A DNA stretch of 64,000 bases, taken from IMG/VR virus record IMGVR_UViG_3300044633_000899, positions 62,001-126,000 of that record. One strand, given 5' to 3'. Shown here one piece after another: positions 6,133 through 57,101 of the stretch. The notes under the pieces are model-generated. The model saw nothing but the letters and a program-made list of their open reading frames with translations, was not told where the DNA came from and made no database searches. Within the stretch, counting starts at the first letter, position 1, and every line of letters begins with the position of its first letter. A program made the translations under genes and the position numbers.

Positions 6133-6867
6133 ATGAATTACGGAAAAGAATTTAAAAGTTTTGCAAAGAGCGAAGGAATTTCATCATTAACGATGGATTA
6201 TTATCAAAAACATATTGAGAACTCATTGACACCATACATTTTGGAAGAACGTGAATTACGAGCAACACAGATGGATATTTTCTCAAGATTAATCTTGGAT
6301 AGGATTGTTTGGGCATCAGGTACCGTTGATTCAAAAATGGGAGACATTATACAAGCACAATTAATATTTTTGGACACAACAGATAAAAAGGACATTAATT
6401 TATATCTTAACACTGGTGGTGGATCCGTTATGGTTGGATTGGGAATTCGTGATGTAATGAATTATATTAATTCGGATGTTGCAACGACAAACCTCGGAAT
6501 GTGTGCGTCAATGGGATCAATATTATTATCATCTGGGACAAAGGGAAAACGAAGTTCGTTATTATCATCCAAAGTTATGACACACTTTGTTAGTCACGGA
6601 ACAAGTGGTAACATACAAGATACAAGAATTAATCAATTAGAGGCCGAAAAATACAATTATATGTTATTTAAAATTTTGGCCGAAAACTCTGGAAAAACTT
6701 TTGATGAAATATATGAATTGTCTAGACGAGACTGTTGGTTTAACTCAGATGAATCAAAAGAGATTGGTTTAATTGACAATATTATTGGTCTTGAAAAAGA
6801 TAAGTCAATAACCAATTATTTGGAAGGATTTGAAGAATATTACGCTAAAGAAGTTTTTAAATCTTAA
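6133..6867 (+). CDS. clpP: ATP-dependent Clp protease proteolytic subunit
   Basis: MDIFSRLILDRI, AQLIFLD, DINLYLNTGGGSV, GMCASMG (Ser), VMTH (His), RDCWF (Asp). Confidence 0.93.
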   Translation: MNYGKEFKSFAKSEGISSLTMDYYQKHIENSLTPYILEERELRATQMDIFSRLILDRIVWASGTVDSKMGDIIQAQLIFLDTTDKKDINLYLNTGGGSVMVGLGIRDVMNYINSDVATTNLGMCASMGSILLSSGTKGKRSSLLSSKVMTHFVSHGTSGNIQDTRINQLEAEKYNYMLFKILAENSGKTFDEIYELSRRDCWFNSDESKEIGLIDNIIGLEKDKSITNYLEGFEEYYAKEVFKS

Positions 6868-6868
6868 A

Positions 6869-7249
6869 TTATTTGTTTTTGATGATTATATCAGATATTA
6901 GGTCGTAATACATATCCGCGACAACATCTTCATCCATATCTTCATCTTTAACTTCGTTAAAACCAATTGCGTATAATAGGTTAATAATATCAAAATAATA
7001 GAATGGTAAATCAACAACACTAGGTAGCCCTTGAAGCCATTCTATTATTGCTTTTTTCTCACCCATTCTGTTAATCGCCCAACCGTACTCACTTTGGAAT
7101 ATATTATATAACGAACCAAATTTATCACTTGAATTTTCGTATTCATCATAACCAGTTAAATCAATACCTTCTTCAACAAAGGACTCCAATTCTTCAAAAG
7201 GTGTTTTTTCAATATATTCCAATAATATTCTTTTTATAATTTTTTTCAT
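6869..7249 (-). CDS. leader-bearing hypothetical protein (putative virion cargo)
   Basis: Starts MKKIIKRILLEYIE; TATTTAT just upstream on the minus strand. Confidence 0.6.
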   Translation of the reverse strand: MKKIIKRILLEYIEKTPFEELESFVEEGIDLTGYDEYENSSDKFGSLYNIFQSEYGWAINRMGEKKAIIEWLQGLPSVVDLPFYYFDIINLLYAIGFNEVKDEDMDEDVVADMYYDLISDIIIKNK

Positions 7250-7260
7250 ATCAATAAATA

Positions 7261-8082
7261 TTATCCAACTAACAAATTGTGATATTTTTTAAACTTTTCT
7301 AATCTATCGTCAATACCATTTTCACCACCATTGATACGTTTAGTAAGTTTTTTAACAACCTCATCTGTTGAACCAAGATCACATATTGACCAAAGTTTGT
7401 TTGACTCAAAGAAAAACCCAGCGGAAGCCAAAGGGTATTTTGTTGCAACAAGATCTGGATTAGCAACACAATCTTCACCAATAAAGTCAGAAAATTTTTT
7501 ATAATTGGACTTACCGGTCGCTTGTAGGTAACCTCGCCCACGAAATTTATATCCCTCTTTAGATACTTCATCTCCGTTATCCATACGGTTAGCATAAACC
7601 CTTGACGCAATCTTTTCTGGTTGTTTAGCATATGATTCAGCCAAGTTACCAGGAAAGTATTTACCAAACGTTCTTTTTAATCCGTCAACAGAATAATTTA
7701 AATTTTCTGATACTACTTTAAAATTACCTGACTCGTGGGCACATTGTGATAAAAAGTGAGCAAGTCTGAGATTTGTTGTGATATTAAATTTATTAGCGGC
7801 TTCTGGTATTTGGTTTAATACAACATCAGGGATATGACCCTTTAGTTTCTCAATGTTTAGTCCTGTTACTGGTTTGATTACTACATCTTCTTTAATTACA
7901 ATCGGAAACATTTTGTTCCACGTTATACTACCAACAACACCGTCATCTTTTAGTCCGTTTTCTTTTTGCCAAGACTTAATAGCACTTTCAGTTTTTGAAC
8001 CAAAACTACCGTCAGCAACTAGTCCTAATTTTTTTTGGATTTTTTTTACATCATCACCTTTTGAACCAATTTTAATTTCCAT
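7261..8082 (-). CDS. endolysin: peptidoglycan-binding domain + GH19 glycosidase
   Basis: N-terminal GSKGDDVKKIQ..ADG.FG..TE..IK.WQ..NGL..DG.VG; AHFLSQCAHESGNF, FRGRGYLQATG, TKRINGG. Confidence 0.9.
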   Translation of the reverse strand: MEIKIGSKGDDVKKIQKKLGLVADGSFGSKTESAIKSWQKENGLKDDGVVGSITWNKMFPIVIKEDVVIKPVTGLNIEKLKGHIPDVVLNQIPEAANKFNITTNLRLAHFLSQCAHESGNFKVVSENLNYSVDGLKRTFGKYFPGNLAESYAKQPEKIASRVYANRMDNGDEVSKEGYKFRGRGYLQATGKSNYKKFSDFIGEDCVANPDLVATKYPLASAGFFFESNKLWSICDLGSTDEVVKKLTKRINGGENGIDDRLEKFKKYHNLLVG

Positions 8083-8095
8083 AATATTTCTTTAG

Positions 8096-8111
8096 TTATA
8101 AATATTTATAA
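8096..8111. promoter_or_regulatory. palindromic bidirectional late-type promoter TTATAAATATTTATAA
   Basis: Perfect 16-bp palindrome giving the TATTTAT motif on both strands, between divergent genes. Confidence 0.55.
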
Positions 8112-8121
8112 ATAAAGAATT

Positions 8122-8730
8122 ATGAGTTATAGTAGAGAACAAATTGAAACGGCAGTTAAAGCCAAAGGATATAAGTGGTTTGAAGACGCTTCAAATAAAA
8201 CTTATGATGTAAACATTGTTGGAATAAGAAATAACACATCAACTGTTGCTGATAAAGTAACAAATGTATTTGACGATTTCATTACAATATCGTTTAAAAA
8301 TGAGAAAGGTTTTTGGGAATTTTATTGTTGGAACGCAACTACAGATCCAGGTAAAAAAGGTGTTGAAAAATTTACAAATAAAAATGGCGTTGCTAGATTA
8401 GTACCAAATCAATACAGAGGTGTTTGGATGATTGATAAACATCAAGGTAAATATGACGCATTATGTCAAAGATTAGATAACGTGACTGTATTTCGTGATG
8501 CTAACAAGGATATGACATATGATGAAAAAGTTACAGACACTGGTATGTTTGGTATTAACATACACAAGGCCGGTCAAGATTCCACATGGGTTGACGATTG
8601 GAGTCACGGATGTCAAGTGTTTAAAAGGGTTAAAGATTTTGATGTGTTTATGAAAATTTGTAAAAAAGCGGCTAAGATACACGGTAATAAATTCAGTTAT
8701 ACATTATTAGAAAGTACTGATATTATTTGA
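8122..8730 (+). CDS. YkuD/L,D-transpeptidase-like cysteine peptidase
   Basis: GINIHKAG-x9-WSHGCQV matches the H..S.GC catalytic signature. Confidence 0.55.
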   Translation: MSYSREQIETAVKAKGYKWFEDASNKTYDVNIVGIRNNTSTVADKVTNVFDDFITISFKNEKGFWEFYCWNATTDPGKKGVEKFTNKNGVARLVPNQYRGVWMIDKHQGKYDALCQRLDNVTVFRDANKDMTYDEKVTDTGMFGINIHKAGQDSTWVDDWSHGCQVFKRVKDFDVFMKICKKAAKIHGNKFSYTLLESTDII

Positions 8731-8757
8731 TATTTAAAATCTTTTTTATTACATTTG
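8726..8757 (+). promoter_or_regulatory. Bacteroidota-type promoter TTTG-N20-TACATTTG
   Basis: Both elements present, directly before the ATG at 8762. Confidence 0.7.
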
Positions 8758-10369: not shown

Positions 10370-11344
10370 CTACCAAGTAACATTACAACCAGACATAGGT
10401 AAACCACTTTTATTACCAAAATCAATAACAAAACTACTAATAGTGTTCTCAATATAGTCTCTAAATTCAAAAGATTCTTCGAAATCATCAAATGGTGATT
10501 GTGTACTACTAAATCTAAGAGGTTCATCGTTTTCATCATAAACAACACCTTCGGTCACTGTTGCGTCAACGTAACAATATATTTTACCATCTTCATCATC
10601 AAAACGGATAGAATCTATAGTAAACCTAAGTTTACCTTCAAACCAATCATCAGAAAAATCATTTTCAGTGAAAACTTGATCCTCAAGTAATTCTTTAATA
10701 ATTTGTGCGCGACTATTGATATCACTATATTCGGCATAAAACTCCATAATATTTTTTAGTTTTGATTTTAAACCCATTCTTTTAATATCATTATAATTTA
10801 ATTTAACTTCTAAACCACTTTCTTTTTGTTTATCCCAAAGATTAAATAAGAACACTTTAAAAGGGTCATTATTTGTCTCAACAATTCTATTTTTTTTACG
10901 TAAAGTTTTTGACTCGTAATATTGATTAAATTTGTTTAACATTTTATAATATTGTTGTAACAAATCGTACCTATCAAATTTATTTGATAACCAGTTTTCA
11001 CCATTTCTATATTCGTTATTTTGGTCATCAAAAGTTATAAAGTTATTTGGGTTGTTACCATATAAACGATAAATAGCAAAAGCATTACTACCAAGTTTTT
11101 CTTTTATTTCTTTATTTCTAATTACGATATAACCTAAAACGCCCAATTTTATATGTTTATTAAAATCTTTATCACAATCTCGTTTTGTTGTACACCATTT
11201 TGTGTCGGATCCATATTTTCTTGAAGCACTATGTGTTAACGGAATTGTTAATATAAAGTCATCGTCACGATACAACTCAACGGATTCGTCGGTTGAAACT
11301 TTATGTACTTCTTTTAAAATTTTTTTAATAATCGTCTTCATCAT
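10370..11344 (-). CDS. leader-bearing protein with PLT..YG..TKWC domain
   Basis: M(M)KTIIKKILKE start; IPLTHSASRKYGSDTKWCTT. Confidence 0.65.
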   Translation of the reverse strand: MMKTIIKKILKEVHKVSTDESVELYRDDDFILTIPLTHSASRKYGSDTKWCTTKRDCDKDFNKHIKLGVLGYIVIRNKEIKEKLGSNAFAIYRLYGNNPNNFITFDDQNNEYRNGENWLSNKFDRYDLLQQYYKMLNKFNQYYESKTLRKKNRIVETNNDPFKVFLFNLWDKQKESGLEVKLNYNDIKRMGLKSKLKNIMEFYAEYSDINSRAQIIKELLEDQVFTENDFSDDWFEGKLRFTIDSIRFDDEDGKIYCYVDATVTEGVVYDENDEPLRFSSTQSPFDDFEESFEFRDYIENTISSFVIDFGNKSGLPMSGCNVTW

Positions 11345-11960
11345 CAAATTCTTCAATATCGTAAGTGTAATTTTGTTGAAACTCTATAATCCATATTGTG
11401 TCAAAATATTTATTTAATTGTTCGTCAGTTAAATCAACAATTGGTATATTTTCACCATCAATATACGCCATAGTACGACCAACAGATTTAAACCATTCAA
11501 TTTTTTGTTCTCTATTGTAATTCGGTATCTTTTTTTGAATTTCAGATTTACATAAACCACCTTTAAAATTATAAGGTGCAACACGATCAACATCAGTTAA
11601 TGAAAGTTTTGAACGACTATTAAAATCATCAAGATATGTCTCTTCAATGTAATCACCTATCATTTCAGTAACTAAACCCTTTCTAATTTTAAAATACTTA
11701 CTAACCTCATTGATTATTTTATCATCTATTAATATTTCAACATCTTTATCGGTACCCATAAATAGACCAATTTCTTTACCATTAGAACAAAATTCAACAC
11801 GATAGTCACCGTATGTTTGATCTTCAGTATAATGGTCTAAAGTATATCTCTTAAACACTAAGTTAATATACTTCATAATTATTGAATATAACTCTGGTGT
11901 TACTTTATTATAACGTTTTTTTATTTCTTCCCTTAAAATTTTTTTAATAATTGATCGCAT
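11325..11960 (-). CDS. leader-bearing hypothetical protein
   Basis: MRSIIKKILREE; TATTTAT upstream on the minus strand. Confidence 0.65.
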   Translation of the reverse strand: MRSIIKKILREEIKKRYNKVTPELYSIIMKYINLVFKRYTLDHYTEDQTYGDYRVEFCSNGKEIGLFMGTDKDVEILIDDKIINEVSKYFKIRKGLVTEMIGDYIEETYLDDFNSRSKLSLTDVDRVAPYNFKGGLCKSEIQKKIPNYNREQKIEWFKSVGRTMAYIDGENIPIVDLTDEQLNKYFDTIWIIEFQQNYTYDIEEFDDEDDY

Positions 11961-31748: not shown

Positions 31749-32126
31749 ATGGGAATGTATAACTTATCACCAGAGTTCATTAGGAGAATTGATTGGTCTA
31801 AAATTGACCAACACATCAATGATGTGATTGACTCTGAAATTAAGGTACTTAATCATACAACATCAACTAACGATCTTAAAACCTCCAAGAGTCATCTATA
31901 TCATATGATACTTAAAAAAGCCGCGGAAAATTTGGTATATACCGATGAATTTAGAAGTTTAACAGATAAACCCTGGGATTGGTATATAAAACATGTTGAT
32001 ACCCTAAAAGTATTTTTTAAAAACAAATATGGTAATTTAATAAGACGAAAGGTTAAAAAGGCTGTTGACACGCGATACAAATACCTTGATGATTATTATT
32101 GGGGAAAAACCACAGATATTAAGTAA
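31749..32126 (+). CDS. RR-family protein
   Basis: FIRRIDWSKID; TATTTAT upstream. Confidence 0.6.
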   Translation: MGMYNLSPEFIRRIDWSKIDQHINDVIDSEIKVLNHTTSTNDLKTSKSHLYHMILKKAAENLVYTDEFRSLTDKPWDWYIKHVDTLKVFFKNKYGNLIRRKVKKAVDTRYKYLDDYYWGKTTDIK

Positions 32127-32200
32127 TATTATTAAAAATCCTTGTATATTAGAGTATTAATTTATACATTTGTACCATTCGGAACAAAATTATAGGTTAT

Positions 32201-32518
32201 ATGGATAAATATGATATTGCATTACTTAGGAGATTGGTTATTATTGATGAATTGATTGATTCAAATTTAAATAGGAATAACAATAAAATAAAAATATTCT
32301 GTAACACAAATACTTTAACTCAGTTTATAGGATATGTGGTAGAGTATGTTAAAATTGAAATTATGAATACACATTTTAAGATACCACTTAGTATAATATT
32401 TTATGATATCACTGATGAACATAAAGAACTTGATCTTAAAGTAACAGACTTTATAAAAAACAAATATAAGAACAAACTCAACGAATACTATCACAACGTT
32501 AATATTGGTTTATATTAA
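32201..32518 (+). CDS. RR-family protein
   Basis: LLRRLVIID; CTTG-N20-TACATTTG promoter 32141-32172. Confidence 0.55.
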   Translation: MDKYDIALLRRLVIIDELIDSNLNRNNNKIKIFCNTNTLTQFIGYVVEYVKIEIMNTHFKIPLSIIFYDITDEHKELDLKVTDFIKNKYKNKLNEYYHNVNIGLY

Positions 32519-32544: not shown

Positions 32545-33060
32545 ATGAATATACAAAAATCCATAAGAAAAATATTACGGGAATATTTAGAAGAAGCAAG
32601 ATTATCTGACCTTTTACGTGTTACTGGTAATAAAAATGAATTACACAAACAGATTGAGAAAGAGATTTCAAAAGAATTTGAAATAGATAGAGAACTCCCA
32701 ACACAATTAACATTAAAAAAAAGGTATAATAATAAAAAAATAAAAGTATATTTTAATTATTATGATAATTTAAAACATAATTTAAAACAAAGAATTAAAG
32801 AAAGAACAAGTTTCAAAAGTATTTCAGAGTTTGCCGAAATTATTACCGATGTTGTTAATTATGTTTTACCAGATGAACTTGGTGATAATATTAATCAAAA
32901 TGGTAAATACGCGGTTAAGTTAATGGAAAGACAACTGACTATTATATTTTCTGTTAATTTAAACAACATCAAAGATAATCAAATACAGATTAATATCATC
33001 ACAGTTTTATCAAAAACACAAATAGAAGAAAAAGATATAATACATTCTTTTATATATTAA
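32545..33060 (+). CDS. leader-bearing hypothetical protein
   Basis: MNIQKSIRKILREYLEE. Confidence 0.65.
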   Translation: MNIQKSIRKILREYLEEARLSDLLRVTGNKNELHKQIEKEISKEFEIDRELPTQLTLKKRYNNKKIKVYFNYYDNLKHNLKQRIKERTSFKSISEFAEIITDVVNYVLPDELGDNINQNGKYAVKLMERQLTIIFSVNLNNIKDNQIQINIITVLSKTQIEEKDIIHSFIY

Positions 33061-33083
33061 AATAGTAGTAACGAATTAATAAT

Positions 33084-33338
33084 ATGGTATTTAAAAACGA
33101 AGAGAAAGCAAAACAACTAATTGTGGAAATTGTATCAAGTGAATATGTAGACATTATTCCTGGTAAAGGGTTACATTTCAACGATGATATTGTTTATGAT
33201 AAAAACTTTTCACACATAACAAATGATGATGAATATTCATTAATTGAGGAAAAACTTAAATCAATTGTTAAGTTAATTAATGACGATCCAAATTTGGTAC
33301 ATAAAGATTTGGAAGACGAACTTTGGTATATGGTTTAA
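33084..33338 (+). CDS. hypothetical protein
   Basis: 84-aa ORF. Confidence 0.55.
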   Translation: MVFKNEEKAKQLIVEIVSSEYVDIIPGKGLHFNDDIVYDKNFSHITNDDEYSLIEEKLKSIVKLINDDPNLVHKDLEDELWYMV

Positions 33339-33497
33339 TATTAAAAAAGACACGAAAAAGATTTGAGATAATTCATATACCAAATGGTTTAAGTACACTT
33401 GAATTAATAGAAAATCGTGATGACTGGGTAAATATAATAAAATAATCAATTTAGAAATAAGTTGAGGATTTTTATATTTGATATATATTTATATTAT

Positions 33498-35048
33498 ATG
33501 AACCTACAACAAACCATAAGAAAAATATTAAGAGAAGAATTTAAATCACATAATAACTTACAAGAAACTGTAAGAAAAGTATTAAGAGAAAAACTTAGAC
33601 AAGAGAAAGTCGTGTTAAACGAACAGAAAATAAGTTTACCAATTATATTAAGAGATAGTTATACAGCACCAAAAGGTGATGGGGATGCTTTACACTCGTT
33701 TGAAAGACGTAAAAGTGATGGTTTTGGAGGAAAAATGACAACAAAGATTGATCAAAAATTAAAAGAGGTTTATGACTCGGGTATTAATCCAGATCTTGTT
33801 AGTTTAAAAATTGTTGTAGATTCATCACAATATAAAGTTACTTGGGAAGCAATAATTGATGAGAGTAAAGACGGTAAAGCATATATGGGTTCATCAACAA
33901 GAGGATCCGCTGGTGGTGGTGCCGACAGAAGAGCCTTAGGTCAATTAGATAAATTAAAAAGACAACTCAGCAGAAATGGCGCTGAGGATATAACAGAAGT
34001 GTTAGACTTTGTTAATCCAACAGGTGTCTATATTAGACAATATTTTTTTAAATATACATTACCAAAAAAATACCCACCATATACAACAAGTGGTGACTAT
34101 GATAGAACCCAAAAACCTTCAATTATCAATTTAAGTCTTGATGACCCAAGTAGTCAAACTGAGTTGGCATCTAACACACAGTATTCTGTGTGTGTTGGTG
34201 ACACATACAAAAAAGGATGTAAAGATATTGGAACTAAGTATAATCGTCCAAATTATGACGGTATTATTTATAAAGTACAAGGTTGTATTGGGACAATTCA
34301 AGATGGGTTTTTTGGTAAAAAAACGGAAAAGAGTTTAAAAGAGAAATTTGGAAAAAGTGAATTTAAATTGTCGGATGTTGATACAATATGTAAAGATTCG
34401 GAAACAGACAACATTAGTGGTTCACAAACTAATTTTAAAACTATCACTAAATTTATTATAGATAATTTTGAAGGTGGTTACTGGAATCCTTTTTGCAAAC
34501 ACCCAACGAGTAGTATGGGAAAATCAACAGAAACAATGTTTGGTTTGGATAGGTATAATGGAAATATTGAAAGTAAACCTGATGGTAAAAAGTTTTTTGA
34601 AATTATAGATAACGCAAAAACCGATGCGGGGGCAACATCTTCAGGAAGTGGAAAAAATATGACTTGGTCAAATATGTCAAAATTTTGTAAAACGTGGAAA
34701 TGGTTATATCGAGGTGGTGACAAAGAAGATGAACTTAAAGATTTAGCGGTAAACATTATGAAAACCGCTTACGACAGAAATATGTCAAATTATGTTAAAT
34801 CTGATAAAACAAGGGAAAAAATTGAAACAATTCCAGCGTTAACATTACATATGTCTTACGCTAGTTGGAACGGTCCTGGTTATTTTCAGACATTTGCAAA
34901 AGATTTAACAAACGCCGTTAATCAAGGTAAGTCCGATAAAGAATTAATTGATGTGGCACTTAAATCACGAACTGACGATCGTAGAATGAATAAACCAAAA
35001 GTTTTAGCTGCAATCTCAAAATTAAAAAATTCAAGTAATATTAGTTAA
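33498..35048 (+). CDS. double-leader protein with C-terminal lysozyme-like (GH108/T4-lysozyme-type) domain
   Basis: MNLQQTIRKILREE..NLQETVRKVLRE; IIDNFEGGY..ETMFGLDR. Confidence 0.55.
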   Translation: MNLQQTIRKILREEFKSHNNLQETVRKVLREKLRQEKVVLNEQKISLPIILRDSYTAPKGDGDALHSFERRKSDGFGGKMTTKIDQKLKEVYDSGINPDLVSLKIVVDSSQYKVTWEAIIDESKDGKAYMGSSTRGSAGGGADRRALGQLDKLKRQLSRNGAEDITEVLDFVNPTGVYIRQYFFKYTLPKKYPPYTTSGDYDRTQKPSIINLSLDDPSSQTELASNTQYSVCVGDTYKKGCKDIGTKYNRPNYDGIIYKVQGCIGTIQDGFFGKKTEKSLKEKFGKSEFKLSDVDTICKDSETDNISGSQTNFKTITKFIIDNFEGGYWNPFCKHPTSSMGKSTETMFGLDRYNGNIESKPDGKKFFEIIDNAKTDAGATSSGSGKNMTWSNMSKFCKTWKWLYRGGDKEDELKDLAVNIMKTAYDRNMSNYVKSDKTREKIETIPALTLHMSYASWNGPGYFQTFAKDLTNAVNQGKSDKELIDVALKSRTDDRRMNKPKVLAAISKLKNSSNIS

Positions 35049-35100
35049 AGAATTTAGAAATAAGTTGGGGATTTTTATGTTCGGGATATATTTATAAGAT

Positions 35101-35418
35101 ATGAACCTACAAGAACAAATATCAAGAATCCAGTCAATGATGGGGGTTAACGAATCATTTTTTGATTGGTTTAAATCGTCAGAAGAAAAACCAACTCAAT
35201 CAGAAGAAAGATTTACCTGTGAAGATTGTGGTGAACAAAACTACAATATGTATATGGTTAATGATGATTTATGGGATAAATATGGTAATGAAAAAATGAC
35301 TTTATGTAAAAGTTGTTTGGAACAAAGAATGGGTAGAGAATTAACCAAAGATGATATCTCACAACATAAAGACGCATTGACAAATATTCATAATCCAGAA
35401 TTAAAAAACTTTTACTGA
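35101..35418 (+). CDS. leader + Zn-finger protein
   Basis: MNLQEQISRIQSMMG; CEDC..CKSC. Confidence 0.65.
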   Translation: MNLQEQISRIQSMMGVNESFFDWFKSSEEKPTQSEERFTCEDCGEQNYNMYMVNDDLWDKYGNEKMTLCKSCLEQRMGRELTKDDISQHKDALTNIHNPELKNFY

Positions 35419-35420
35419 TT

Positions 35421-36713
35421 ATGAACTTACAAGAGCACATACGAAAAGTATTAAAGGAAATTAGAGTACCAAGAGAAGAAAGGGTACAGTTATATAAGGA
35501 CGATAATATTATCGTTGTAGTTCCGTTAACACATAGAGCCTTACAGAAATATGCCCACAGATGTCAGTGGTGTATTAATGATGATAAGGATGAGTGGGAA
35601 GATTACCATAAAGGATTACACGCGGTTATTATTCAAAGAAACCCCAAAAAAATAAAGATAGGGATCACAGGAAATCCAGTACCAACAGAAATTTTTATTA
35701 TGGATAGATGGGATGAAGGTGGTTACCGCTTTAAAGACGTTTGTGACATATTAAACCATAATTTCAAAGATGAGGTTGATATGAAAGATTATTATACGAC
35801 AATATTAAACGACATTAATAATTTTGGAACCAATATAGTTTATTATTCCCCTAGTAATGAGTTATATGATCAAGAAGATAATTATTTAGGTGGTTTTAAT
35901 TATAAAATATCAGACATACCAAATGTCACACCAGAAGTAATTAAGATTATGGATGAATATTTAACAAAAGAAGAGTTTGAAAGACCGGACGCACCAAAAA
36001 GAAATCAACAAGAACTTGATGAATACGCAAGAACATTAAAAAACGCAAGACAACAAGGTGTTGGATTAAGATTCCCAAAATCGGCAATAAAATCAAATCC
36101 ATCAAGATTTAGACCATATAATAGAAAAGGTGTTAATGAGTCAGACCTTGAAACAAAACAGAATGATAAAAGGATTGTTTGTGAGAAATGCGGATGGTCG
36201 TGGGATTTATCTGAAGGTGGTGATGATCCATATACGTGTCATAAGTGTGGAAACGAAAACCATAAATCTGAGTTAACGGAAAAGTGTTGGAAAGGTTACA
36301 CCCAGAAAGGAATGAAAACAATGTTTGGTAAAAAATACCCTAATTGTGTTAAAAATAAAAAATCCAAAACGAACCTACAAGAATCCATAAGAAGAATAAT
36401 ACGGGAAGAAACCAAACTTAACCCAATGATTCTACGTAGAGTCCGACGCGATGATTTAGAAAGAGAATTTGAGGAGTCTTTAGACGATACATCAAATAGT
36501 GTATTTCATTTAATTAGAAATGGTGGGGGTATTATGGTTTTAGATAGATTTAAATATATTACGGTGTCAAGATTAATAGATGGAATCCATTATGAAATAT
36601 ATAGTACAACACCAGAAGATTCAGAATGGTATGATGAAGTGTTTAATAGTTTAAAAGATTATTATACAGATAGAATTGAGGTTAGATATAAAAAATTAAT
36701 GTCAGAAATATAA
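35421..36713 (+). CDS. mosaic leader-linked polyprotein (WC domain, Zn ribbon, CWKGY module, RR domain)
   Basis: MNLQEHIRKVLKE; VPLTH..QWC; CEKCG..CHKCG; CWKGY..PNCV; internal TNLQESIRRIIREE. Confidence 0.7.
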   Translation: MNLQEHIRKVLKEIRVPREERVQLYKDDNIIVVVPLTHRALQKYAHRCQWCINDDKDEWEDYHKGLHAVIIQRNPKKIKIGITGNPVPTEIFIMDRWDEGGYRFKDVCDILNHNFKDEVDMKDYYTTILNDINNFGTNIVYYSPSNELYDQEDNYLGGFNYKISDIPNVTPEVIKIMDEYLTKEEFERPDAPKRNQQELDEYARTLKNARQQGVGLRFPKSAIKSNPSRFRPYNRKGVNESDLETKQNDKRIVCEKCGWSWDLSEGGDDPYTCHKCGNENHKSELTEKCWKGYTQKGMKTMFGKKYPNCVKNKKSKTNLQESIRRIIREETKLNPMILRRVRRDDLEREFEESLDDTSNSVFHLIRNGGGIMVLDRFKYITVSRLIDGIHYEIYSTTPEDSEWYDEVFNSLKDYYTDRIEVRYKKLMSEI

Positions 36714-36758
36714 TAAGAACCTACAATAAAACATAAGAAAAATATTATTTCGTAAAAG

Positions 36759-36790
36759 TTTGGTGTTTTAAATATAAATACATATATTTG
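36759..36790 (+). promoter_or_regulatory. Bacteroidota-type promoter TTTG-N20-TATATTTG
   Basis: Both elements present, directly before the ATG at 36795. Confidence 0.7.
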
Positions 36791-36794
36791 TCCT

Positions 36795-37208
36795 ATGAAA
36801 ACAAATAAGAACATAGCGGTTGTGGGAACACGTAACTTCACAGATAAAGATACCTTTAAAAGGATAATAAATGAGGTTATAACCATTGAAGGTATACCCA
36901 ATAAAATTGTATCTGGTGGTGCTATTGGTGCTGACACCTTAGCATTTGAATGGGCAATAGAAAATAGTACCGAGATTTTAGTGTTCAAACCAAGGTACGA
37001 GGACTTCCCCAAGAAAAAAAGATGGATGGCACCTAAAGAGAGAAATACGACAATCGTAGATAACTCAGACATAGTTTTGGCTTTTTGGGATATGGAATCT
37101 ACTGGTACTAAAGATACAATCAACAAATCAATAAAAAAAGGAAAAAAGATATATTTATACAATATAAAAGAAAATAATGTATCTTTAATTGGTGATGAAA
37201 TTGTATGA
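36795..37208 (+). CDS. SLOG-superfamily (YspA/DUF2493, DprA-like) protein
   Basis: IAVVGTR, IVSGGA.GAD, RN..IV..SD...AFWD..S.GT..TI. Confidence 0.8.
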   Translation: MKTNKNIAVVGTRNFTDKDTFKRIINEVITIEGIPNKIVSGGAIGADTLAFEWAIENSTEILVFKPRYEDFPKKKRWMAPKERNTTIVDNSDIVLAFWDMESTGTKDTINKSIKKGKKIYLYNIKENNVSLIGDEIV

Positions 37209-37941
37209 TGTTTTTAAGAAATGTGTTTATGAGGGTATTCGTTACGATAGTGAGGAATACAAGATAGATTACGAAAAAGATTTGGTTGACGATTTGATTA
37301 GATTCAGTGATAAAATATCTTTTAAAAAGGATGAATACGGGAATGTGGTCATCATAGGTATTCCAATTAAAAAATCAGAACATAAAAATAAGTTGTTAAA
37401 CGACATTAAAAAGGGTATTAATATTAACCCAGAGGATCTTTCAACCATTATTGACAAGATAGTTACTAATTTAACCGAATATGTAAATTTGGACGATTTT
37501 GATTATGTGGTTTCACCTAAAAGTTCCTCACTTTTAACAAAAAGTTTAATAGATAAACTAAATTCGTTGAGTAATAAACCAACCTTTATTAGTGATATGT
37601 TCTTAAAGAATGATATTGATAATATTTGGTTAGATATTGAGGCTGCGGAAAAAGAACTCAGCAATAAATTCTTAAAGAAATTGGTTAAGGATTTTGAACG
37701 ATCCAAGGGGATTGAAGGTCAGTCAATGAAACTACAGCCCTTAACAAACTTTCAAAGGAAATATGTTAGGGATATGTTAAAAGTAAATCCAAAACATAAT
37801 AATATTCTTACAGATATGTTGGATAAAAACATATTAGTTATTGACGACATATTAACAACGGGAAAGACTTTGAACGATATTCGGGATACGTTATCTAAAT
37901 TAAGTACTGGACAAATAAAATTATTTACAATGTTTGGATGA
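37195..37941 (+). CDS. phosphoribosyltransferase-domain protein
   Basis: ILVIDDILTTGKTL PRPP-binding motif. Confidence 0.75.
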   Translation: MKLYDVFKKCVYEGIRYDSEEYKIDYEKDLVDDLIRFSDKISFKKDEYGNVVIIGIPIKKSEHKNKLLNDIKKGININPEDLSTIIDKIVTNLTEYVNLDDFDYVVSPKSSSLLTKSLIDKLNSLSNKPTFISDMFLKNDIDNIWLDIEAAEKELSNKFLKKLVKDFERSKGIEGQSMKLQPLTNFQRKYVRDMLKVNPKHNNILTDMLDKNILVIDDILTTGKTLNDIRDTLSKLSTGQIKLFTMFG

Positions 37942-37942
37942 T

Positions 37943-38395
37943 ATGAATCTACAAGAATCCATAAGAAGAATATTACGGGAAGAAACAACACTCCAAAGTA
38001 GAGTAAACGAGTTGATTAACACAAAAGGGGTTGTTCTTGCATCAACAATGGTTGGTGGACTTGACACACTATCAAAGATATTAAACTTAGATTTAAATGA
38101 TGTGGACACACAAGAAAAATTAGTTAAAAACTTTATTAATTTTTATGATCTTAAAGAAGAAAGTATTATTATAGATTCTTTAGAAGTTAGGACAACGGTA
38201 AATAGGGGAAAGGTTATCAAAGTAAATGGAACGGTTAATGACGATTGGGAGAATTTTAGTTCGTGGTACGTTCTCCACATTTGTGGTGAGATGGAGAGAT
38301 TTTTCCCATTTAACACTCAACCTTATGATCACTCTGTTTTTACCAATAGTGGTGTTAAAATATTCATAGAATCGGAATTTTTATACGAAGAATAG
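37943..38395 (+). CDS. leader + family-A-like N-terminal module
   Basis: MNLQESIRRILREE; LI...G...A...VGG...L. Confidence 0.65.
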   Translation: MNLQESIRRILREETTLQSRVNELINTKGVVLASTMVGGLDTLSKILNLDLNDVDTQEKLVKNFINFYDLKEESIIIDSLEVRTTVNRGKVIKVNGTVNDDWENFSSWYVLHICGEMERFFPFNTQPYDHSVFTNSGVKIFIESEFLYEE

Positions 38396-38423
38396 AATAA
38401 GAAAAAATAGATATTTATAACAT

Positions 38424-39947
38424 ATGAACTTACAAAAATCCACAAGAATAATAAAAGAAGAATCTAAATTACCCATTAATATTTTGAGGAGGTTAGATTT
38501 ATCGGTTGGATTATTTGATAGGATGAAAAAAGCGGCATTAATTAAATCAATTGATGGACCATTTAACGTTCATAATGTTGCAAGATATGCCGCGGAAGAA
38601 ATTATACCTTGGCATGATGAGGATGGTAATGATTATGAGGATTTTGGTATTTGGGTTTACGATTTTAAAGATTTTTTAATTAACAAATATGGAGAACAGA
38701 CCAAAGAATATATAAACAAAGTATATCCTCAAGGTGGTTTTAAGAGTGATGGTTATGATTATATTTTCTTGAAACATTCCGATATAAATGGTGGAAGTGG
38801 ATTTAGTGAGAGTTATAATACTTGGGGTAATTTACTTTTAGGTCGTGGATGGCGGTTTCCATTGGATTGGTGGGAGATCAAAGCCGATTTGGATAAGATG
38901 GACGAGGGAAAAAAAATAATATTAAAACCAAACGACAAACATAATACTTATGGATATTATTTCTCAATTATAAAAAAGAATTCAAATGTACAAGAGACCA
39001 TCAAAAAAACATTAAGGGAAGAACTGGAATCAAAATGGAATATAGGAAACAAACACGGAAACAAATATAATTATCAACACGGGTTTTGTCATTACTTTGC
39101 ATATAATATTATTGGTAAATTAAAAAAATTATATCCAGATAGAAATATTAGATATTACTTAATACTGGCCGATGAGGTTTATGATTTTGACGAGGGGGAA
39201 GTGGAGCAATCATATCTTGTTCACGCTTATATAAAGATTGATGATTTATATTTAGATTCAAATGGGTTTGCAACAGAAGAAGAAATAAAACAGAGAACCC
39301 AGGGTTGGTATGATAGACAATTAAACCAATTACCAGAAGATTATAGGATAGATATTTGGCACGATGAATATAATAAAATACCAAAATATTATTTTAATAA
39401 CCAATTCTGTAATGTAGGTACAATAAAAAAAGATGTAGAAAAATTCTTATCACATCCAGAGGTAAAAGAACTATTACAAATTATTGATAATAATCAACAG
39501 ATAAAGGAGGGGTTACCAAACCGAACCAAAGAATTAATTTTAGATAAGATTAGGACAATGGGGTTTGACGATGCTGCAAGTATAGTTGGTGGAAAAGATA
39601 ACCTTTCAAAAATAACTGGGATAAATACGTATGAAGAATATCTTAACTTGTTTAATGATCTTACTATTTCAACCAGTCAAGAAAAACCATATATAACATT
39701 ATATAAGAATAACAAAGGTATAAATGTTTTCGTTAAGTATTATGAGGCTAAATCCAAAATGTCTTATATTTTTATTAATCACAACATACTTCAAAAACCA
39801 CTTAGTGAATATAACATACAAAAAAGTAGAGTATTAAGAAAATGGTTAAAAAATACTTATGATATAGAAGTTAAAAATACGGATTTTTTACAAGCATACT
39901 ACCCAGGTGAAGAAAATGCTGGGGGTTATTTAGAATATTTAACATAA
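38424..39947 (+). CDS. mosaic leader-linked polyprotein (RR domain, unknown domains, family-A domain)
   Basis: MNLQKSTRIIKEE; internal NVQETIKKTLREE; C-terminal LILDKIRTMGF..A..IVGG..FNDL..WLKNTY. Confidence 0.7.
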   Translation: MNLQKSTRIIKEESKLPINILRRLDLSVGLFDRMKKAALIKSIDGPFNVHNVARYAAEEIIPWHDEDGNDYEDFGIWVYDFKDFLINKYGEQTKEYINKVYPQGGFKSDGYDYIFLKHSDINGGSGFSESYNTWGNLLLGRGWRFPLDWWEIKADLDKMDEGKKIILKPNDKHNTYGYYFSIIKKNSNVQETIKKTLREELESKWNIGNKHGNKYNYQHGFCHYFAYNIIGKLKKLYPDRNIRYYLILADEVYDFDEGEVEQSYLVHAYIKIDDLYLDSNGFATEEEIKQRTQGWYDRQLNQLPEDYRIDIWHDEYNKIPKYYFNNQFCNVGTIKKDVEKFLSHPEVKELLQIIDNNQQIKEGLPNRTKELILDKIRTMGFDDAASIVGGKDNLSKITGINTYEEYLNLFNDLTISTSQEKPYITLYKNNKGINVFVKYYEAKSKMSYIFINHNILQKPLSEYNIQKSRVLRKWLKNTYDIEVKNTDFLQAYYPGEENAGGYLEYLT

Positions 39948-39949
39948 TA

Positions 39950-40456
39950 ATGAGAGAGAAACCAATTTTAACAAAAACAAATGTATTTTCCGATGATAGG
40001 GGAACGTTTTTTCCTTTAGACCTTAAAGAACCTAGGTGGATACAAAGTAACGTCAGTATAAGTAAAAAATGGACACTTAGAGGATTACACCACCAGATTG
40101 GTAACACAGCACAAAGTAAGTTGGTAACGGTGATTAAAGGGGAGATTTTGGACTTTATCGTTGATTTAAGAAAGGAAAGTTTCGGAGACGTGTTTTTCTT
40201 TAGGATGCAACCTGGGGATCAACTATACGTACCAAAAAGATTCGCACACGGATTCTTGGCACTTCAAGAAGATACAATTATCCAATACTTGGTGGATAAT
40301 GATTATTCACCAAAGACCGAAATGAGTTTTGACTGGAAATCAATACCAATGATTAAAGAATCAATATTAACTGAAGTTGGTGACAGTAATAATTTATATC
40401 TATCACCCAAAGATATGTTAGGTGAACCACTTGACAAAAAATGGATGGAAGAATAA
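39950..40456 (+). CDS. rmlC: dTDP-4-dehydrorhamnose 3,5-epimerase
   Basis: FSDDRG.F, Q.N.S.S....LRGLH.Q..Q.KLV.VI.G.I.D..VDLR, HGFL, Y.VDN.Y. Confidence 0.9.
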   Translation: MREKPILTKTNVFSDDRGTFFPLDLKEPRWIQSNVSISKKWTLRGLHHQIGNTAQSKLVTVIKGEILDFIVDLRKESFGDVFFFRMQPGDQLYVPKRFAHGFLALQEDTIIQYLVDNDYSPKTEMSFDWKSIPMIKESILTEVGDSNNLYLSPKDMLGEPLDKKWMEE

Positions 40457-40554: not shown

Positions 40555-40878
40555 ATGGAATACAAAGATAAAATAAGAGTAAGGAAATACAAAGATATAA
40601 TAAGAAGATACGATTTATCAAAGATTGACTATCAGTTTAAATTATTTTGTAGAAAATACTCACCTTGTCATTTTATTGATGAAGGATATAACTATTACTT
40701 CAAAGAAATGAAAAGAATGACTATCGGTACTATAATAACTAATATGTTATTCCAAGATTTAATAAGTGACGATGGAGATATAGCATCTAAAATGAAATTA
40801 TTAATAGATTATTATATTACTGAAGAATTATCAGAATATTGTGAAAGTTATTTTGATATAACGACAGAAAAATGTTAA
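40555..40878 (+). CDS. RR-family protein
   Basis: IIRRYDLSKID..MLFQDLISD; tandem paralog of the next gene. Confidence 0.65.
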   Translation: MEYKDKIRVRKYKDIIRRYDLSKIDYQFKLFCRKYSPCHFIDEGYNYYFKEMKRMTIGTIITNMLFQDLISDDGDIASKMKLLIDYYITEELSEYCESYFDITTEKC

Positions 40879-40906
40879 ATCCAACAACATTGATATTTAT
40901 TAACAT

Positions 40907-41194
40907 ATGAAATACTTACCATTAATAAGAAGAATTGATTTATCAACAATTGATCGTATTTTTAAAGACCTTTGTCGTAGATACTTTGTGTGTGGTGATA
41001 CATATGAGGATTTTACTAAAGACATTGTAAGAATGACAGGTAATAGAATATTACAAACTATGATATTCCAAGATTTAATAAGTGATAATGAAGAACAATT
41101 ATCTAAATTAAGACCAGAAATAGAATTCTATATTAAAGAAGAACTAGAAGATTATTTTAATGAATTTTGGGAAACAAGTAATAAGGATTGTTAA
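40907..41194 (+). CDS. RR-family protein
   Basis: LIRRIDLSTID..MIFQDLISD. Confidence 0.65.
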   Translation: MKYLPLIRRIDLSTIDRIFKDLCRRYFVCGDTYEDFTKDIVRMTGNRILQTMIFQDLISDNEEQLSKLRPEIEFYIKEELEDYFNEFWETSNKDC

Positions 41195-42795: not shown

Positions 42796-42846
42796 ATGTA
42801 TAATTTAAATGATCCCCACGTTATTGGTTGGGGGATAAAACCATTG

Positions 42847-42918
42847 TAGTCCCACCGGGAATCGAACCCGACTTTCCAGGATGAAAACCTGACGACCTAA
42901 CCGATAGTCGATGGGACC
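42847..42918 (-). tRNA. trnE: tRNA-Glu (TTC), no encoded CCA
   Basis: Full cloverleaf: GGTCCCA/TGGGACT acceptor, TCAGG-TTTTCAT-CCTGG anticodon arm, GGTTCGATTCC T-arm. Confidence 0.92.
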
Positions 42919-55829: not shown

Positions 55830-57101
55830 ATGGACTTAAAGAAATTATTATTAAGTGAAGGTCAACGTACTAATACAAGAAAAGGTTTGACTAAAAACCT
55901 TATGGAACAGGTTAGTTCTGAATCACAATTTAAATTATCCGAAACAATAACCTTAAAGTCAGCCCAAGCTGCTGGTCAGGATGAATTGAAGTTGTTCAAG
56001 GGGGCTTTGTTCAAAGTAGGAAAAAATAGAATTTTAGTTTCTAATACAAAATACCAAATGGTTAAATCAGATAATGGTAATCCAACAACAGGTACGATAG
56101 AAGGAACAGTACATTATAATTGTAAAGCTGGTAAATTTTATATACCTGGAAAACAAAATACTTATTATAATAAAAACTATGATAATATAAGACCAGATTT
56201 TAAGAAATTCTGTGCTGTTGCTAAACAAACTAAATCAATTGGTGGTGGTGGTAATAAAGTAAATGATCAAAAATTAAATGATTACCCTTGTGTTACAAAA
56301 TTATTAAAAGACGGGAAAGGTAAAGTTTTTGATCAAGAAACGTCAGGTGTAAACCCTATAAAAGACGGTAGTCAATATATTAGTTTTGGTACTTTTCCAA
56401 ACGAGATCAAATTTTTTAACAATGGTCGTTATTACAACGATAAAACCAATAAAGGGGGTGATTATCATTGTGATGGTAATAAAATAATATGGTCTAAAAA
56501 ACAAACAACACCAGAACGTACACCAGGTAGTGGTGGTGCACCAACTACACAATCTCAAACACCAACATTAATTAAACAAATACAAAAAACAATTGGTGTT
56601 ACAGAAACTGGTAAACTTACCGATACTGAAATTCAAACAATATATGATAAGTTAAATCCGTCAGAACAACAAGTTCCAACACCTAGTAACACATCAGATA
56701 ATCAAGCACTAAAAAAGGCACTTGGTGGTAGTTTGGACGCAAAACCATTTGCGTTTGATTATAAAAAGAAGATGGTTAGTGAAGAAATCAATAGAATTAA
56801 AGAAATGATGGGTATTGTTTTAAATGAACAAACGACAACACCAACAGAACAACCAGAAAAGACACCAACAAAAAAATTACAAGAATTATTAAATACTAAA
56901 TTTAGTGCAGGTTTAACTGTTGATGGTAAAATGGGACCAAAAACGGCTCAAGCGATTATAAATGCGTTAGGTAAAGCAACTGTAACAACACCGACACCAA
57001 GTTCCACAAATCAAACGTCAAGTGGTACACCAGTAGATACTAAACCAACTGATAATACGTCATTAGGAACTCCTGAACAAGAGACGTTTACAACATTTTA
57101 A
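55830..57101 (+). CDS. leader-linked multi-module protein with PG-binding-like segments
   Basis: MDLKKLLLSE; internal EEINRIKEMMGIVLNEQ; LQELLN....GLTVDGKMGPKT; T/P-rich linkers. Confidence 0.6.
   Translation: MDLKKLLLSEGQRTNTRKGLTKNLMEQVSSESQFKLSETITLKSAQAAGQDELKLFKGALFKVGKNRILVSNTKYQMVKSDNGNPTTGTIEGTVHYNCKAGKFYIPGKQNTYYNKNYDNIRPDFKKFCAVAKQTKSIGGGGNKVNDQKLNDYPCVTKLLKDGKGKVFDQETSGVNPIKDGSQYISFGTFPNEIKFFNNGRYYNDKTNKGGDYHCDGNKIIWSKKQTTPERTPGSGGAPTTQSQTPTLIKQIQKTIGVTETGKLTDTEIQTIYDKLNPSEQQVPTPSNTSDNQALKKALGGSLDAKPFAFDYKKKMVSEEINRIKEMMGIVLNEQTTTPTEQPEKTPTKKLQELLNTKFSAGLTVDGKMGPKTAQAIINALGKATVTTPTPSSTNQTSSGTPVDTKPTDNTSLGTPEQETFTTF

What the first reader, a model, noticed from the sequence alone, without database searches (positions are those of the whole stretch)
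35421..39947. Cassette fusions make polyproteins with internal leaders, including a fossil ATG-to-ACG start
Seen: 35421-36713 strings together a leader, a WC domain, a CxxC Zn ribbon, a CWKGY..PNCV module, a second complete leader and an RR domain. The internal leader DNA at 36369 (ACG AAC CTA CAA GAA TCC ATA AGA AGA ATA ATA CGG GAA GAA AC) is almost identical to the start of the gene at 37943 (ATG AAT CTA CAA GAA TCC ATA AGA AGA ATA TTA CGG GAA GAA AC). 38424-39947 has an internal NVQETIKKTLREE near 38985, 33498 has a doubled leader, and 55830 has an internal EEINRIKEMMG..LNEQ echoing 35101. Inference: genes are assembled by joining tagged modules, and the internal leaders act as protease-cleavable linkers that release separate effectors inside the head.
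Basis: partly seen in the sequence, partly recalled or inferred. Interest (0 to 1): 0.72.

Follow-up and report, generated by a model that had tools for sequence, protein, structure and literature searches.

The report
Leader-tagged gene cassettes fused in-frame
A lake-water giant phage related to T4 carries an array of small genes that all start with the same 14-residue leader, and small slips at gene junctions have welded neighbours into multi-module proteins that keep the leaders inside, much like the swappable injected 'internal proteins' of T4.

Summary
The window comes from a 296-kb lake-water jumbo myovirus with a T4-type head module, including a gp21-like protease.

Window 32545-39947 is an array of cassette genes. 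Each opens with a ~43-nt block encoding M-NLQESIRRILREE.

The ACG at 36369 is a dead ATG. Seven of seven related loci have two separate genes there, overlapping by ATGA. Free-standing 114-aa proteins up to 95% identical begin with M at that residue. The window has a 4-nt insertion that merges the frames.

The 38424 gene is a triple fusion, and each of its modules is common as a stand-alone protein.

Leaders mark the differences from a close relative (89-94% nt identity): three blocks present here and absent there all end at leader blocks. Leader codons are conserved at synonymous sites using non-preferred codons.

The leader is a portable tag. It precedes unrelated domains, is interchangeable with MKIIITESQ-type leaders, and is not part of the predicted folds.

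Not shown: that the leader targets proteins to the prohead, or that it is cut by the protease. This remains plausible (~45%). The leaders contain L/I-x-E motifs like T4 gp21 sites, including ITE and LTE.

Verdict: module joining is supported; cleavable linkers are untested.

The parts
32545..33060 (+). Cassette gene (171 aa) starting MNIQKSIRKILRE
   Evidence: ATATTTAT motif 12 nt before its ATG
33430..33526 (+). Direct repeat copy 1: upstream block plus start of leader. Left flank of the 33498 gene.
   Evidence: the repeat finder D2, 77% identity to 35033-35129. The gene between the two copies is absent from close relative L086.
33498..35048 (+). 516-aa gene with a doubled leader (33501-33539 and 33555-33593). 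The rest has no Pfam or PHROG match. Present here, absent in L086.
35033..35129 (+). Direct repeat copy 2: upstream block plus start of the leader of the 35101 gene
35101..35418 (+). 105-aa gene with the second leader type, MNLQEQISRIQSMMGVNE, and a CxxC pair
   Evidence: phrog_6053. The same leader type precedes WC-domain proteins elsewhere.
35421..36713 (+). Fused 430-aa ORF: leader 1, WC domain, mid module, Zn ribbon, CWKGY..PNCV tail, leader 2, RR domain
35424..35459 (+). Leader 1 (NLQEHIRKVLKE)
35463..35981 (+). WC domain (aa 15-187). Confidently folded, no known fold match. 65-75% identical in over 100 homologues, where it sits at the N-terminus, middle or C-terminus.
35982..36275 (+). 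Mid module (aa 188-249) and CxxC..CxxC Zn ribbon (aa 250-285). Predicted flexible. In relatives the mid module is the C-terminal end of a gene.
36267..36371 (+). Block absent from L086. It holds the CWKGY..PNCV tail module, a 4-nt insertion (about 36362-36365) that joins the two frames, and ACG (36369-36371) in place of the ATG.
   Evidence: Seven of seven relatives have ...AAATGA... with ATG here.
36372..36410 (+). Internal leader 2 (NLQESIRRIIREE); with the ACG, 36369-36412 is 41/44 nt identical to 37943-37986
36414..36710 (+). RR domain (aa 332-430), a helical bundle. With leader 2 it equals a free-standing 114-aa gene in relatives.
   Evidence: 32 of 65 hits are exactly 114 aa; P0122 is 95% identical and starts with M
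36715..36747 (+). Non-coding leader stub (AAG AAC CTA CAA TAA AAC ATA AGA AAA ATA TTA). It aligns to the live leader of the next gene in L086.
36748..38421 (+). Segment absent from L086: SLOG/DprA-like gene (36795-37208, TATAAATA at 36773), PRTase-like gene (37189-37941), and leader gene 37943-38395.
37943..38395 (+). 150-aa cassette gene starting MNLQESIRRILREE
   Evidence: Contigs of other phages break off at 37941-43 and 37983-86.
38424..39947 (+). Triple fusion. Module A is aa 1-186, module B aa 187-353, module C aa 354-507. An intact internal leader lies at 38985-39023. A decayed MKIIITESQ-type leader (LLQIIDNNQQ) lies at 39471-39500.
   Evidence: Also fused in L086.
56781..56831 (+). Internal copy of the MMG-type leader (EEINRIKEMMGIVLNEQ) inside the 55830-57101 gene, just before a weak PG_binding_3 match

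Best explanation
Window 32.5-40 kb is a hyperplastic cassette array of a lake-water T4-like jumbo phage.

**Cassette anatomy.** A cassette has three parts:
- a conserved ~43-nt 5' block that encodes a 14-residue amphipathic leader (M-NLQESIRRILREE);
- a variable domain;
- often a short conserved tail module (mid, or CWKGY..PNCV).

Neighbouring cassettes abut with ATGA or TAATG-type overlaps or a 1-nt gap.

**(1) Shown: fusion by junction indels.** Small indels at these junctions put two cassettes in one frame.
- The 35421 ORF was fused at 36369 by a 4-nt insertion, followed by loss of the start (ATG to ACG).
- The 38424 ORF is three cassettes.

**(2) Shown as a pattern, inferred as a mechanism: leaders are recombination joints.** Cassettes are gained, lost and swapped at the leader DNA and at the tail modules. 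This would also keep the blocks alike at synonymous sites.

**(3) Inferred, about 45%: the leader peptide is a T4-CTS-like tag.** It would take the protein into the prohead core and be cut after Glu of its L/I-x-E motifs by the gp21-type protease.
- A fused ORF would then be processed into the same products as separate genes.
- That would make fusions nearly neutral, and would explain why internal leaders stay intact.
For: **Fusion**
- Seven of seven relatives have separate genes with ATG at the ACG position.
- 114-aa stand-alone homologues exist, one 95% identical.
- The three modules of the 38424 product are each common alone.
- The junction is confirmed in reads-derived contigs and in independent assemblies.

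**Recombination joints**
- Against L086 (89-94% nt identity), all three large present/absent blocks end at leader blocks.
- The 33498 gene lies between 97-nt direct repeats.
- A 105-nt CWKGY block sits next to leader 2.
- A 1.7-kb insert sits next to a leader stub.
- Metagenome contigs break or re-join at 36349-61, 37941-43 and 37983-86, with depth spikes on the blocks.
- Leader codon use differs sharply from background:

| Codon | In leaders | Background |
|---|---|---|
| AAC | 73% | 29% |
| CTA | 64% | 8% |
| TCC | 84% | 7% |
| AGG | 69% | 13% |

**Portable tag**
- 182 leaders occur in 80 related loci, 181 of them on the gene strand.
- The same domain occurs with an NLQES leader, with an MKIIITESQ leader, or with none.
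- In the AlphaFold2 model the leaders are isolated low-confidence helices outside the two folded domains.

**CTS-like reading**
- A Peptidase_S77 gene lies between portal and scaffold.
- T4 gp21 cuts after Glu, for example at ITE-6 and LTE-619 of Alt. T4 internal proteins share only a leader (PMC5694885, PMC3012670, PMC12373910).
- The genome's other leader classes read MKIIITE.. and ..RLTE...
- One MKIIITENQ gene sits between portal and protease.
- Internal leaders occur in 70 of 120 homologues against 0.2 expected by chance. They are as close to consensus as N-terminal ones.
Against: - There is no proteomic, cleavage or expression evidence.
- The complex prediction of the protease with the junction peptide gave no answer.
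- The NLQES genes carry ATATTTAT at -13, not the TATAAATA motif found before the sheath and other structural genes. Late expression is therefore not indicated.
- Some internal leaders are decayed (LLQIIDNNQQ, Glu lost) or shortened (NLKESEE).
- Mosaic breakpoints also occur at module borders without a leader.
- Synonymous-site conservation could instead reflect an mRNA or translation-start function.
- The leader has no sequence similarity to the T4 CTS. This comparison is from memory, not from a tool.
Confidence: 0.65

Rival explanations
1. The fused ORFs are stable multidomain proteins. The internal leaders are only flexible linkers or fossils of past gene starts. They are not cleaved and have no role in packaging.
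For: - The B/C junction of the 38424 product has a decayed leader that has lost its Glu.
- Several homologues have shortened internal leaders.
- The stub at 36715-47 shows that leaders can die.
- The region around leader 2 is predicted disordered, as any linker would be.
Against: - Internal leaders are found in 70 of 120 homologues. They are at least as close to consensus as N-terminal ones (10.3 against 9.9 of 13).
- Recurrent junction types are conserved across diverged loci.
- Even the shortened linkers keep the L-x-E-S core.
Confidence: 0.3
2. The conserved block acts at the nucleic-acid level only, and the peptide is incidental. Possible roles are a translation-start or re-initiation enhancer for genes without a Shine-Dalgarno sequence, or a binding site for a regulator or nuclease.
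For: - Non-preferred codons are conserved at synonymous sites. At the variable fourth residue after the ATG, the third base C is kept while the amino acid changes.
- Genes are packed with ATGA overlaps or 1-nt gaps and no obvious ribosome-binding site.
- The ATATTTAT motif lies at -13.
Against: - Replacements are conservative (R/K, I/V, L/I) and keep an amphipathic helix.
- Internal copies without ATG (26 of 27 in the related loci) are equally conserved, although no initiation can occur there.
- Different leader classes with different DNA replace each other before the same domain.
Confidence: 0.15
3. Internal leaders mark internal translation starts. The long ORFs would be nested genes that yield both the fused protein and the downstream module on its own.
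For: In the WC-domain family, the residue before the internal leader is Met in 33 of 56 distinct junctions.
Against: - In this window the three internal leaders are preceded by ACG, AAT and TCA, not ATG.
- In the related viral loci, 26 of 27 internal leaders lack ATG.
- The retained Met can be explained by descent from one ancestral WC-leader junction.
Confidence: 0.1
4. The fused frames are assembly or sequencing artefacts in a repeat-rich region.
For: Leader blocks are repeated and tangle metagenome assemblies, giving many joints and loose ends.
Against: - A 1979-nt contig spans the 36369 junction with no difference, and no indel is reported there.
- The same junction occurs in independent JGI and ENA proteins.
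- L086 has the 38424 fusion too.
Confidence: 0.02

Closest known systems
T-even phage internal proteins (IPI, IPII, IPIII, Alt) with the capsid targeting sequence, in the hypervariable IP loci
   Same: - The phage is T4-like and has a gp21-type prohead protease.
- Many unrelated small proteins share only a short N-terminal leader.
- The leader contains L/I-x-E, the type of site cut by gp21.
- The genes are clustered in a hypervariable locus where cassettes are exchanged (PMC3012670, PMC5694885, PMC12373910, PMC2839356).
   Different: - The leader is 14 residues, basic, and unrelated in sequence to the T4 CTS.
- It also occurs inside long ORFs, in 70 of 120 homologues.
- There are several interchangeable leader classes.
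- No packaging, cleavage or anti-defence function has been shown.
- The host and virion are unknown, since this is an uncultured lake phage.
PeSL cassettes (promoter-early stem-loop) of T4-type hyperplastic regions
   Same: - Short conserved repeats flank ORFan cassettes.
- The repeats coincide with insertions, deletions and replacements between close relatives, as expected of homologous-recombination joints (PMC2839356, PMC4122927).
   Different: - Here the repeat is mainly coding: the first 43 nt of each gene, sometimes with 50-60 nt upstream.
- There is no stem-loop or terminator enrichment.
- Because the joint is in frame, exchange and slips create protein fusions.
Multi-site processing of head and ejection proteins by prohead proteases in giant phages (phiKZ, SPN3US) and in T4 (gp22, gp67, gp68, Alt)
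   Same: Cleavage follows Glu in a three-residue motif, at several sites within one protein. The released fragments stay in or leave the head (PMC5694885).
   Different: Those proteins are not built from independently occurring, leader-tagged modules. Processing here is only inferred.
Multi-module virion proteins of T4-like cyanophages carrying the CWxGY..PNCV module (S-SCSM1 ORF29, S-PRM1 6619-8733)
   Same: - They share the ~27-residue CWKGY..GKxYPNCV module, with 79% nt identity over 77 nt.
- S-SCSM1 ORF29 is annotated 'virion protein' in a record whose paper identified virion proteins by mass spectrometry.
   Different: The cyanophage proteins have no NLQES leader. The module lies inside them, not at a gene end.

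Membership tests
T4-type CTS-bearing internal or prohead-core proteins | Encoded by a phage with a T4-type head module and a gp21 (Peptidase_S77) prohead protease | tested here: met
   PF03420 match at 78.9 bits, G000 167920-168348, lying between portal and acidic scaffold and MCP. MCP is homologous to T4 gp23, E 6e-27.
T4-type CTS-bearing internal or prohead-core proteins | Short N-terminal leader shared by otherwise unrelated proteins and ending in an L/I-x-E site | tested here: met
   The leader precedes unrelated domains. It contains LQE and LRE. Other leader classes in the genome contain ITE and LTE.
T4-type CTS-bearing internal or prohead-core proteins | Sequence homology of the leader to the T4 CTS | not tested
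   No tool comparison was made. From memory, the T4 CTS (about 10 residues, acidic) is not similar to this leader.
T4-type CTS-bearing internal or prohead-core proteins | Protein present in the virion, with the leader removed by the protease | not testable with these tools
   This needs virion mass spectrometry or a protease assay. The complex prediction gave no answer.
T4-type CTS-bearing internal or prohead-core proteins | Late (or early plus late) expression compatible with prohead assembly | tested here: inconclusive
   TATAAATA precedes the sheath, other structural genes and several leader genes of other classes. It does not precede the NLQES cluster, which has ATATTTAT at -13.
PeSL-type mobile regulatory cassettes | Intergenic promoter plus stem-loop between ORFans | tested here: not met
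   The conserved block is coding. Most leader genes abut the upstream gene (58 of 79 with an overlap or a gap of 2 nt or less). Terminator-like sites are not enriched.
PeSL-type mobile regulatory cassettes | Insertions, deletions and replacements between close relatives end at the repeated element | tested here: met
   Window against L086; 97-nt direct repeats around the 33498 gene; stub at 36715-47.
Viral polyprotein | One ORF gives several mature proteins by proteolysis at defined linkers | not testable with these tools
   Shown only: the ORFs consist of modules that exist as separate genes elsewhere, and the linkers are predicted flexible.

The most novel reading that the evidence does not exclude
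A clade of uncultured freshwater T4-like jumbo phages uses one short element for two jobs. As DNA it is the recombination joint that shuffles cassettes. As peptide it is the prohead-targeting and protease-cleavage signal. Any in-frame fusion of cassettes would then be a self-resolving polyprotein of packaged, probably injected proteins. That would be a combinatorial system for evolving a large arsenal of virion-delivered proteins.
Probability: 0.3. Interest if true: 0.8.

Novelty: new variant of a known kind. Interest (0 to 1): 0.62.

Why it matters
T4's internal proteins are the textbook case of proteins that a phage packs in its head and injects to disarm host defences. They are few, and they share only a targeting leader.

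Here the same logic may operate on a much larger scale:
- There are dozens of leader-tagged genes per genome.
- There are thousands of homologues in lake metagenomes.
- The modules are shuffled and fused at the leader.

If the leader is a packaging and cleavage tag, three things follow:
- It would name a large set of candidate virion-delivered proteins in uncultured jumbo phages.
- It would explain how gene fusions can be tolerated.
- It would offer a portable tag for loading cargo into large capsids.

Even without that, the locus is a clean natural example of gene fusion. The mechanism is a 4-nt slip at an ATGA overlap followed by loss of the start codon. It is also an example of an in-frame coding repeat acting as a recombination joint.

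Tried and rejected
**Complex prediction.** The prohead protease was folded with the 50-residue junction peptide (aa 296-345). The result was no answer, score 0.00. It is not evidence either way.

**Fold searches.** The AlphaFold2 model was searched against PDB with Foldseek, against AFDB clusters, and with VIA wide.
- No hit was significant for the WC or RR domain.
- The best Z was 6.2, on a helical bundle, which is within noise.

**Family searches.** Pfam and PHROGs found nothing for the leader-gene bodies beyond weak Zn-ribbon hits, PG_binding_3 and unnamed PHROGs.

**Cultured phages.**
- tblastn of the 430-aa protein found only the CWKGY module, in cyanophages.
- The MKIIITENQ head-module protein found nothing.

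**Literature.** Searches for the leader strings gave no hit. Repoila et al. 1994 could not be read.

**Promoter scan.** The sigma-70-type scan is uninformative in this AT-rich DNA: 53 sites found against 59.5 expected.

**MCP cleavage site.** I tried to map the T4 gp23 cleavage site onto this MCP.
- The HMMER alignment does not reach the site reliably.
- FLINE|A at residue 60 is only a candidate I-x-E site.

**Alignment problem.** MAFFT alignments built from domain fragments mis-placed the WC fragments (A3, A4). Alignment A5 was used instead.

**Rejected readings.**
- An alternative genetic code: nothing in the genome calls for one.
- A genome-wide signal peptide: the NLQES form is confined to one cluster.


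Full report
**What the window is.** The window is bases 62001-126000 of a 296,330-bp virus record (30% G+C, CheckV 100%).
- It is a distant T4-like jumbo myovirus. The tail sheath is related to T4 gp18 and the major capsid protein to gp23, E 6e-27.
- The head module reads: portal, three small ORFs, a Peptidase_S77 (gp21-type) protease at 78.9 bits, a very acidic 508-aa scaffold, then the MCP.
- Public runs that hold the stretch are all lake-water metagenomes.

**The observation.** The motif N[LIV]Q[EKQ]xIR[KR]xLRE occurs seven times in window 32545-39023.
- Four copies are N-terminal and three are internal. There are none elsewhere in the genome.
- A degenerate 36-nt pattern finds six copies where none is expected.
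- The repeat finder lists nine DNA copies.
- 36369-36412 and 37943-37986 share 41 of 44 nt, with chance-level identity directly outside.

**The ACG is a dead start codon.** In seven of seven related IMG/VR loci, a gene ending in the CWKGY..PNCV module is followed by a separate leader gene.
- The stop and start overlap as ATGA or lie within a base or two of each other.
- In the alignment the window carries a 4-nt insertion at about 36362-36365, which puts both frames in phase. It has ACG where all seven relatives have ATG.
- A search with residues 317-430 returns 65 proteins. Thirty-two are exactly 114 aa and nearly all begin M-NLQES.
- One of them, P0122, is 95% identical to the window's module.
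- The same fused junction occurs in an independent JGI cluster.
- A contig of a public run spans the junction with no difference.

**The 38424 gene is a triple fusion.** An exhaustive HMMER search splits the 507-aa product into residues 1-186, 187-353 and 354-507.
- Each part is common as a stand-alone protein of matching length.
- Stand-alone copies of module B start with the NLQES leader or with none.
- Stand-alone copies of module C start with NLQES, with MKIIITESQ, or with none.
- At the window's B/C junction a decayed MKIIITESQ-type leader remains (LLQIIDNNQQ, 39471-39500).

**Scale of shuffling.** The 430-aa protein has 2272 database homologues.
- The WC domain (65-75% identical) sits at the N-terminus, in the middle or at the C-terminus.
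- The mid, Zn, CWKGY and RR modules occur in many orders.
- Seventy of the 120 best hits have an internal leader, against 0.2 expected. These are as close to consensus as N-terminal ones.
- In 56 distinct junctions of this family, the residue before the internal leader is Met in 33. In most of the rest it is a residue whose codons include a one-step neighbour of ATG.
- In 80 related viral loci (894 kb) there are 182 leaders, 181 of them on the gene strand and up to 10 per 12 kb. One hundred and five follow an ATG near a stop, and 27 are internal.

**Leaders as joints.** The close relative L086 (89-94% nt identity) differs from the window by three present/absent blocks.
- The 33498 gene. In the window it lies between 97-nt direct repeats of 'upstream block plus leader start'.
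- The 105-nt CWKGY block next to leader 2.
- A 1.7-kb segment (SLOG-like gene, PRTase-like gene, and the 37943 gene). It begins right after a 33-nt dead leader stub at 36715-36747, which aligns to the live leader of the next gene in L086.

Contigs from four lake runs add to this.
- They pile up on the conserved blocks.
- They break or re-join at 36349-36361, 37941-37943 and 37983-37986.
- Some join the CWKGY tail to other leaders.

Leader codons are conserved at synonymous sites with codons that are rare in these genomes:

| Codon | In leaders | Background |
|---|---|---|
| AAC | 73% | 29% |
| CTA | 64% | 8% |
| TCC | 84% | 7% |
| AGG | 69% | 13% |

This fits continual exchange at the block, or an added RNA-level constraint. 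The mechanism is inferred. The pattern is shown.

**The leader as a peptide.**
- Replacements are conservative and keep an amphipathic helix.
- The leader precedes unrelated domains and can be swapped for other leader classes or dropped.
- In the AlphaFold2 model the WC domain (15-185) and RR domain (335-430) are confident. Residues 190-331 and both leaders are low-confidence, isolated helices.
- It is therefore a tag or linker and not part of a fold.

**Is it a T4-like capsid-targeting and cleavage signal?**

Points in favour:
- The phage has the gp21-type protease.
- In T4 all internal head proteins reach the core through a CTS. gp21 cuts after Glu, for example at ITE-6 and LTE-619 of Alt (PMC5694885).
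- T4 internal proteins share only the leader and sit in hypervariable loci (PMC3012670, PMC12373910, PMC2839356).
- The NLQES leader contains LQE and LRE.
- The genome's other leader classes read MKIIITE.. and ..RLTE...
- One MKIIITENQ gene lies between portal and protease.
- A cyanophage protein with the CWKGY module is annotated 'virion protein' in a record whose paper identified virion proteins by mass spectrometry.
- Four of five leader-bearing contigs also hold the protease. They belong to the same phage clade, so this is not independent support.

Points against or neutral:
- There are no proteomic data.
- The NLQES genes have ATATTTAT at -13, not the TATAAATA motif seen before structural genes.
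- Some internal leaders are decayed.

I put this reading at about 45%. If it holds, fused and separate cassettes would yield the same mature products. That would explain why fusions are so common and why internal leaders are kept.

**Function of the modules.** This is unknown. Neither the WC nor the RR domain matches a known fold or family.

**Verdict.**
- The 'cleavable linkers releasing effectors in the head' inference is a reasonable hypothesis that remains untested.
- Relative to known systems, this is a new variant of the T-even internal-protein and PeSL cassette theme. The joint is an in-frame coding leader, so it also generates fusions.

Noticed in passing
G000-wide; in the window e.g. 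32533, 33485, 35088, 38411: ATATTTAT lies 12-14 nt before the ATG of 41 ORFs in the genome. Most have leader-type N-termini (MKIIITESQY at least 11 times, MKKIIKKILREE, ..LTESDL.., NLQ types). In relatives, 13 of 19 leader genes with a real intergenic region have the motif, against 0.03 expected. Its role (promoter -10 for leaderless mRNA, or a translation signal) is unknown.
   Followed up: partly
G000-wide; window 36773, 48726: TATAAATA (the T4 late-promoter type) lies 4-14 nt before the ATG of the sheath gene and other structural genes. It also precedes the SLOG-like gene at 36795 and several leader genes of other classes, but not the NLQES cluster.
   Followed up: partly
L001:8874-11969 (G000 162873-165968): The portal gene is 1031 aa and appears to carry an intein-like insertion. 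A Cys-led block with a homing-endonuclease-like middle interrupts the portal sequence.
   Followed up: no
G000 239200-242671, 283644, 166712 (L001:12713-13159); window 45162 and 39483-39944: 'Module C' (~148 aa, MKIIITESQYKLIKEN.. then ..VGG..NL..) is a multicopy family with at least 8 paralogues. Five are in tandem, one lies in the head module between portal and protease, and one is fused as the C-terminus of the 38424 gene.
   Followed up: partly
window 36280-36356: The CWKGY..PNCV module is 79% identical in DNA over 77 nt to genes of marine cyanomyoviruses (S-PRM1, S-SRM01). That is remarkable conservation between a lake jumbo phage and marine cyanophages, and it suggests a mobile mini-module.
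   Followed up: partly
L086:3790-4641 versus window 31749-32126: In the close relative, the orthologue of the window's 125-aa gene runs on into a module-C domain (283 aa). Fusion state therefore differs between genomes that are 89% identical.
   Followed up: partly
window 10370-11356 (-): A paralogue of the WC domain with a short leader (MMKTIIKKILKE) lies on the opposite strand, 25 kb from the cluster.
   Followed up: no
window 31749-32518 and 40555-41194: Four small genes flanking the cluster begin with an ..IRRxDxSxID.. motif like the start of the RR domain and module A, but lack the NLQES leader. They may be leaderless members of the same domain family.
   Followed up: no
window 42846-42918 (-): tRNA-Glu (anticodon TTC), the only tRNA in the window.
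   Followed up: no
window 39950-40456; 36795-37941: Metabolic-type genes sit next to or inside the array: dTDP-4-dehydrorhamnose 3,5-epimerase (E 1e-33), a SLOG/DprA-like protein and a phosphoribosyltransferase-like protein.
   Followed up: no
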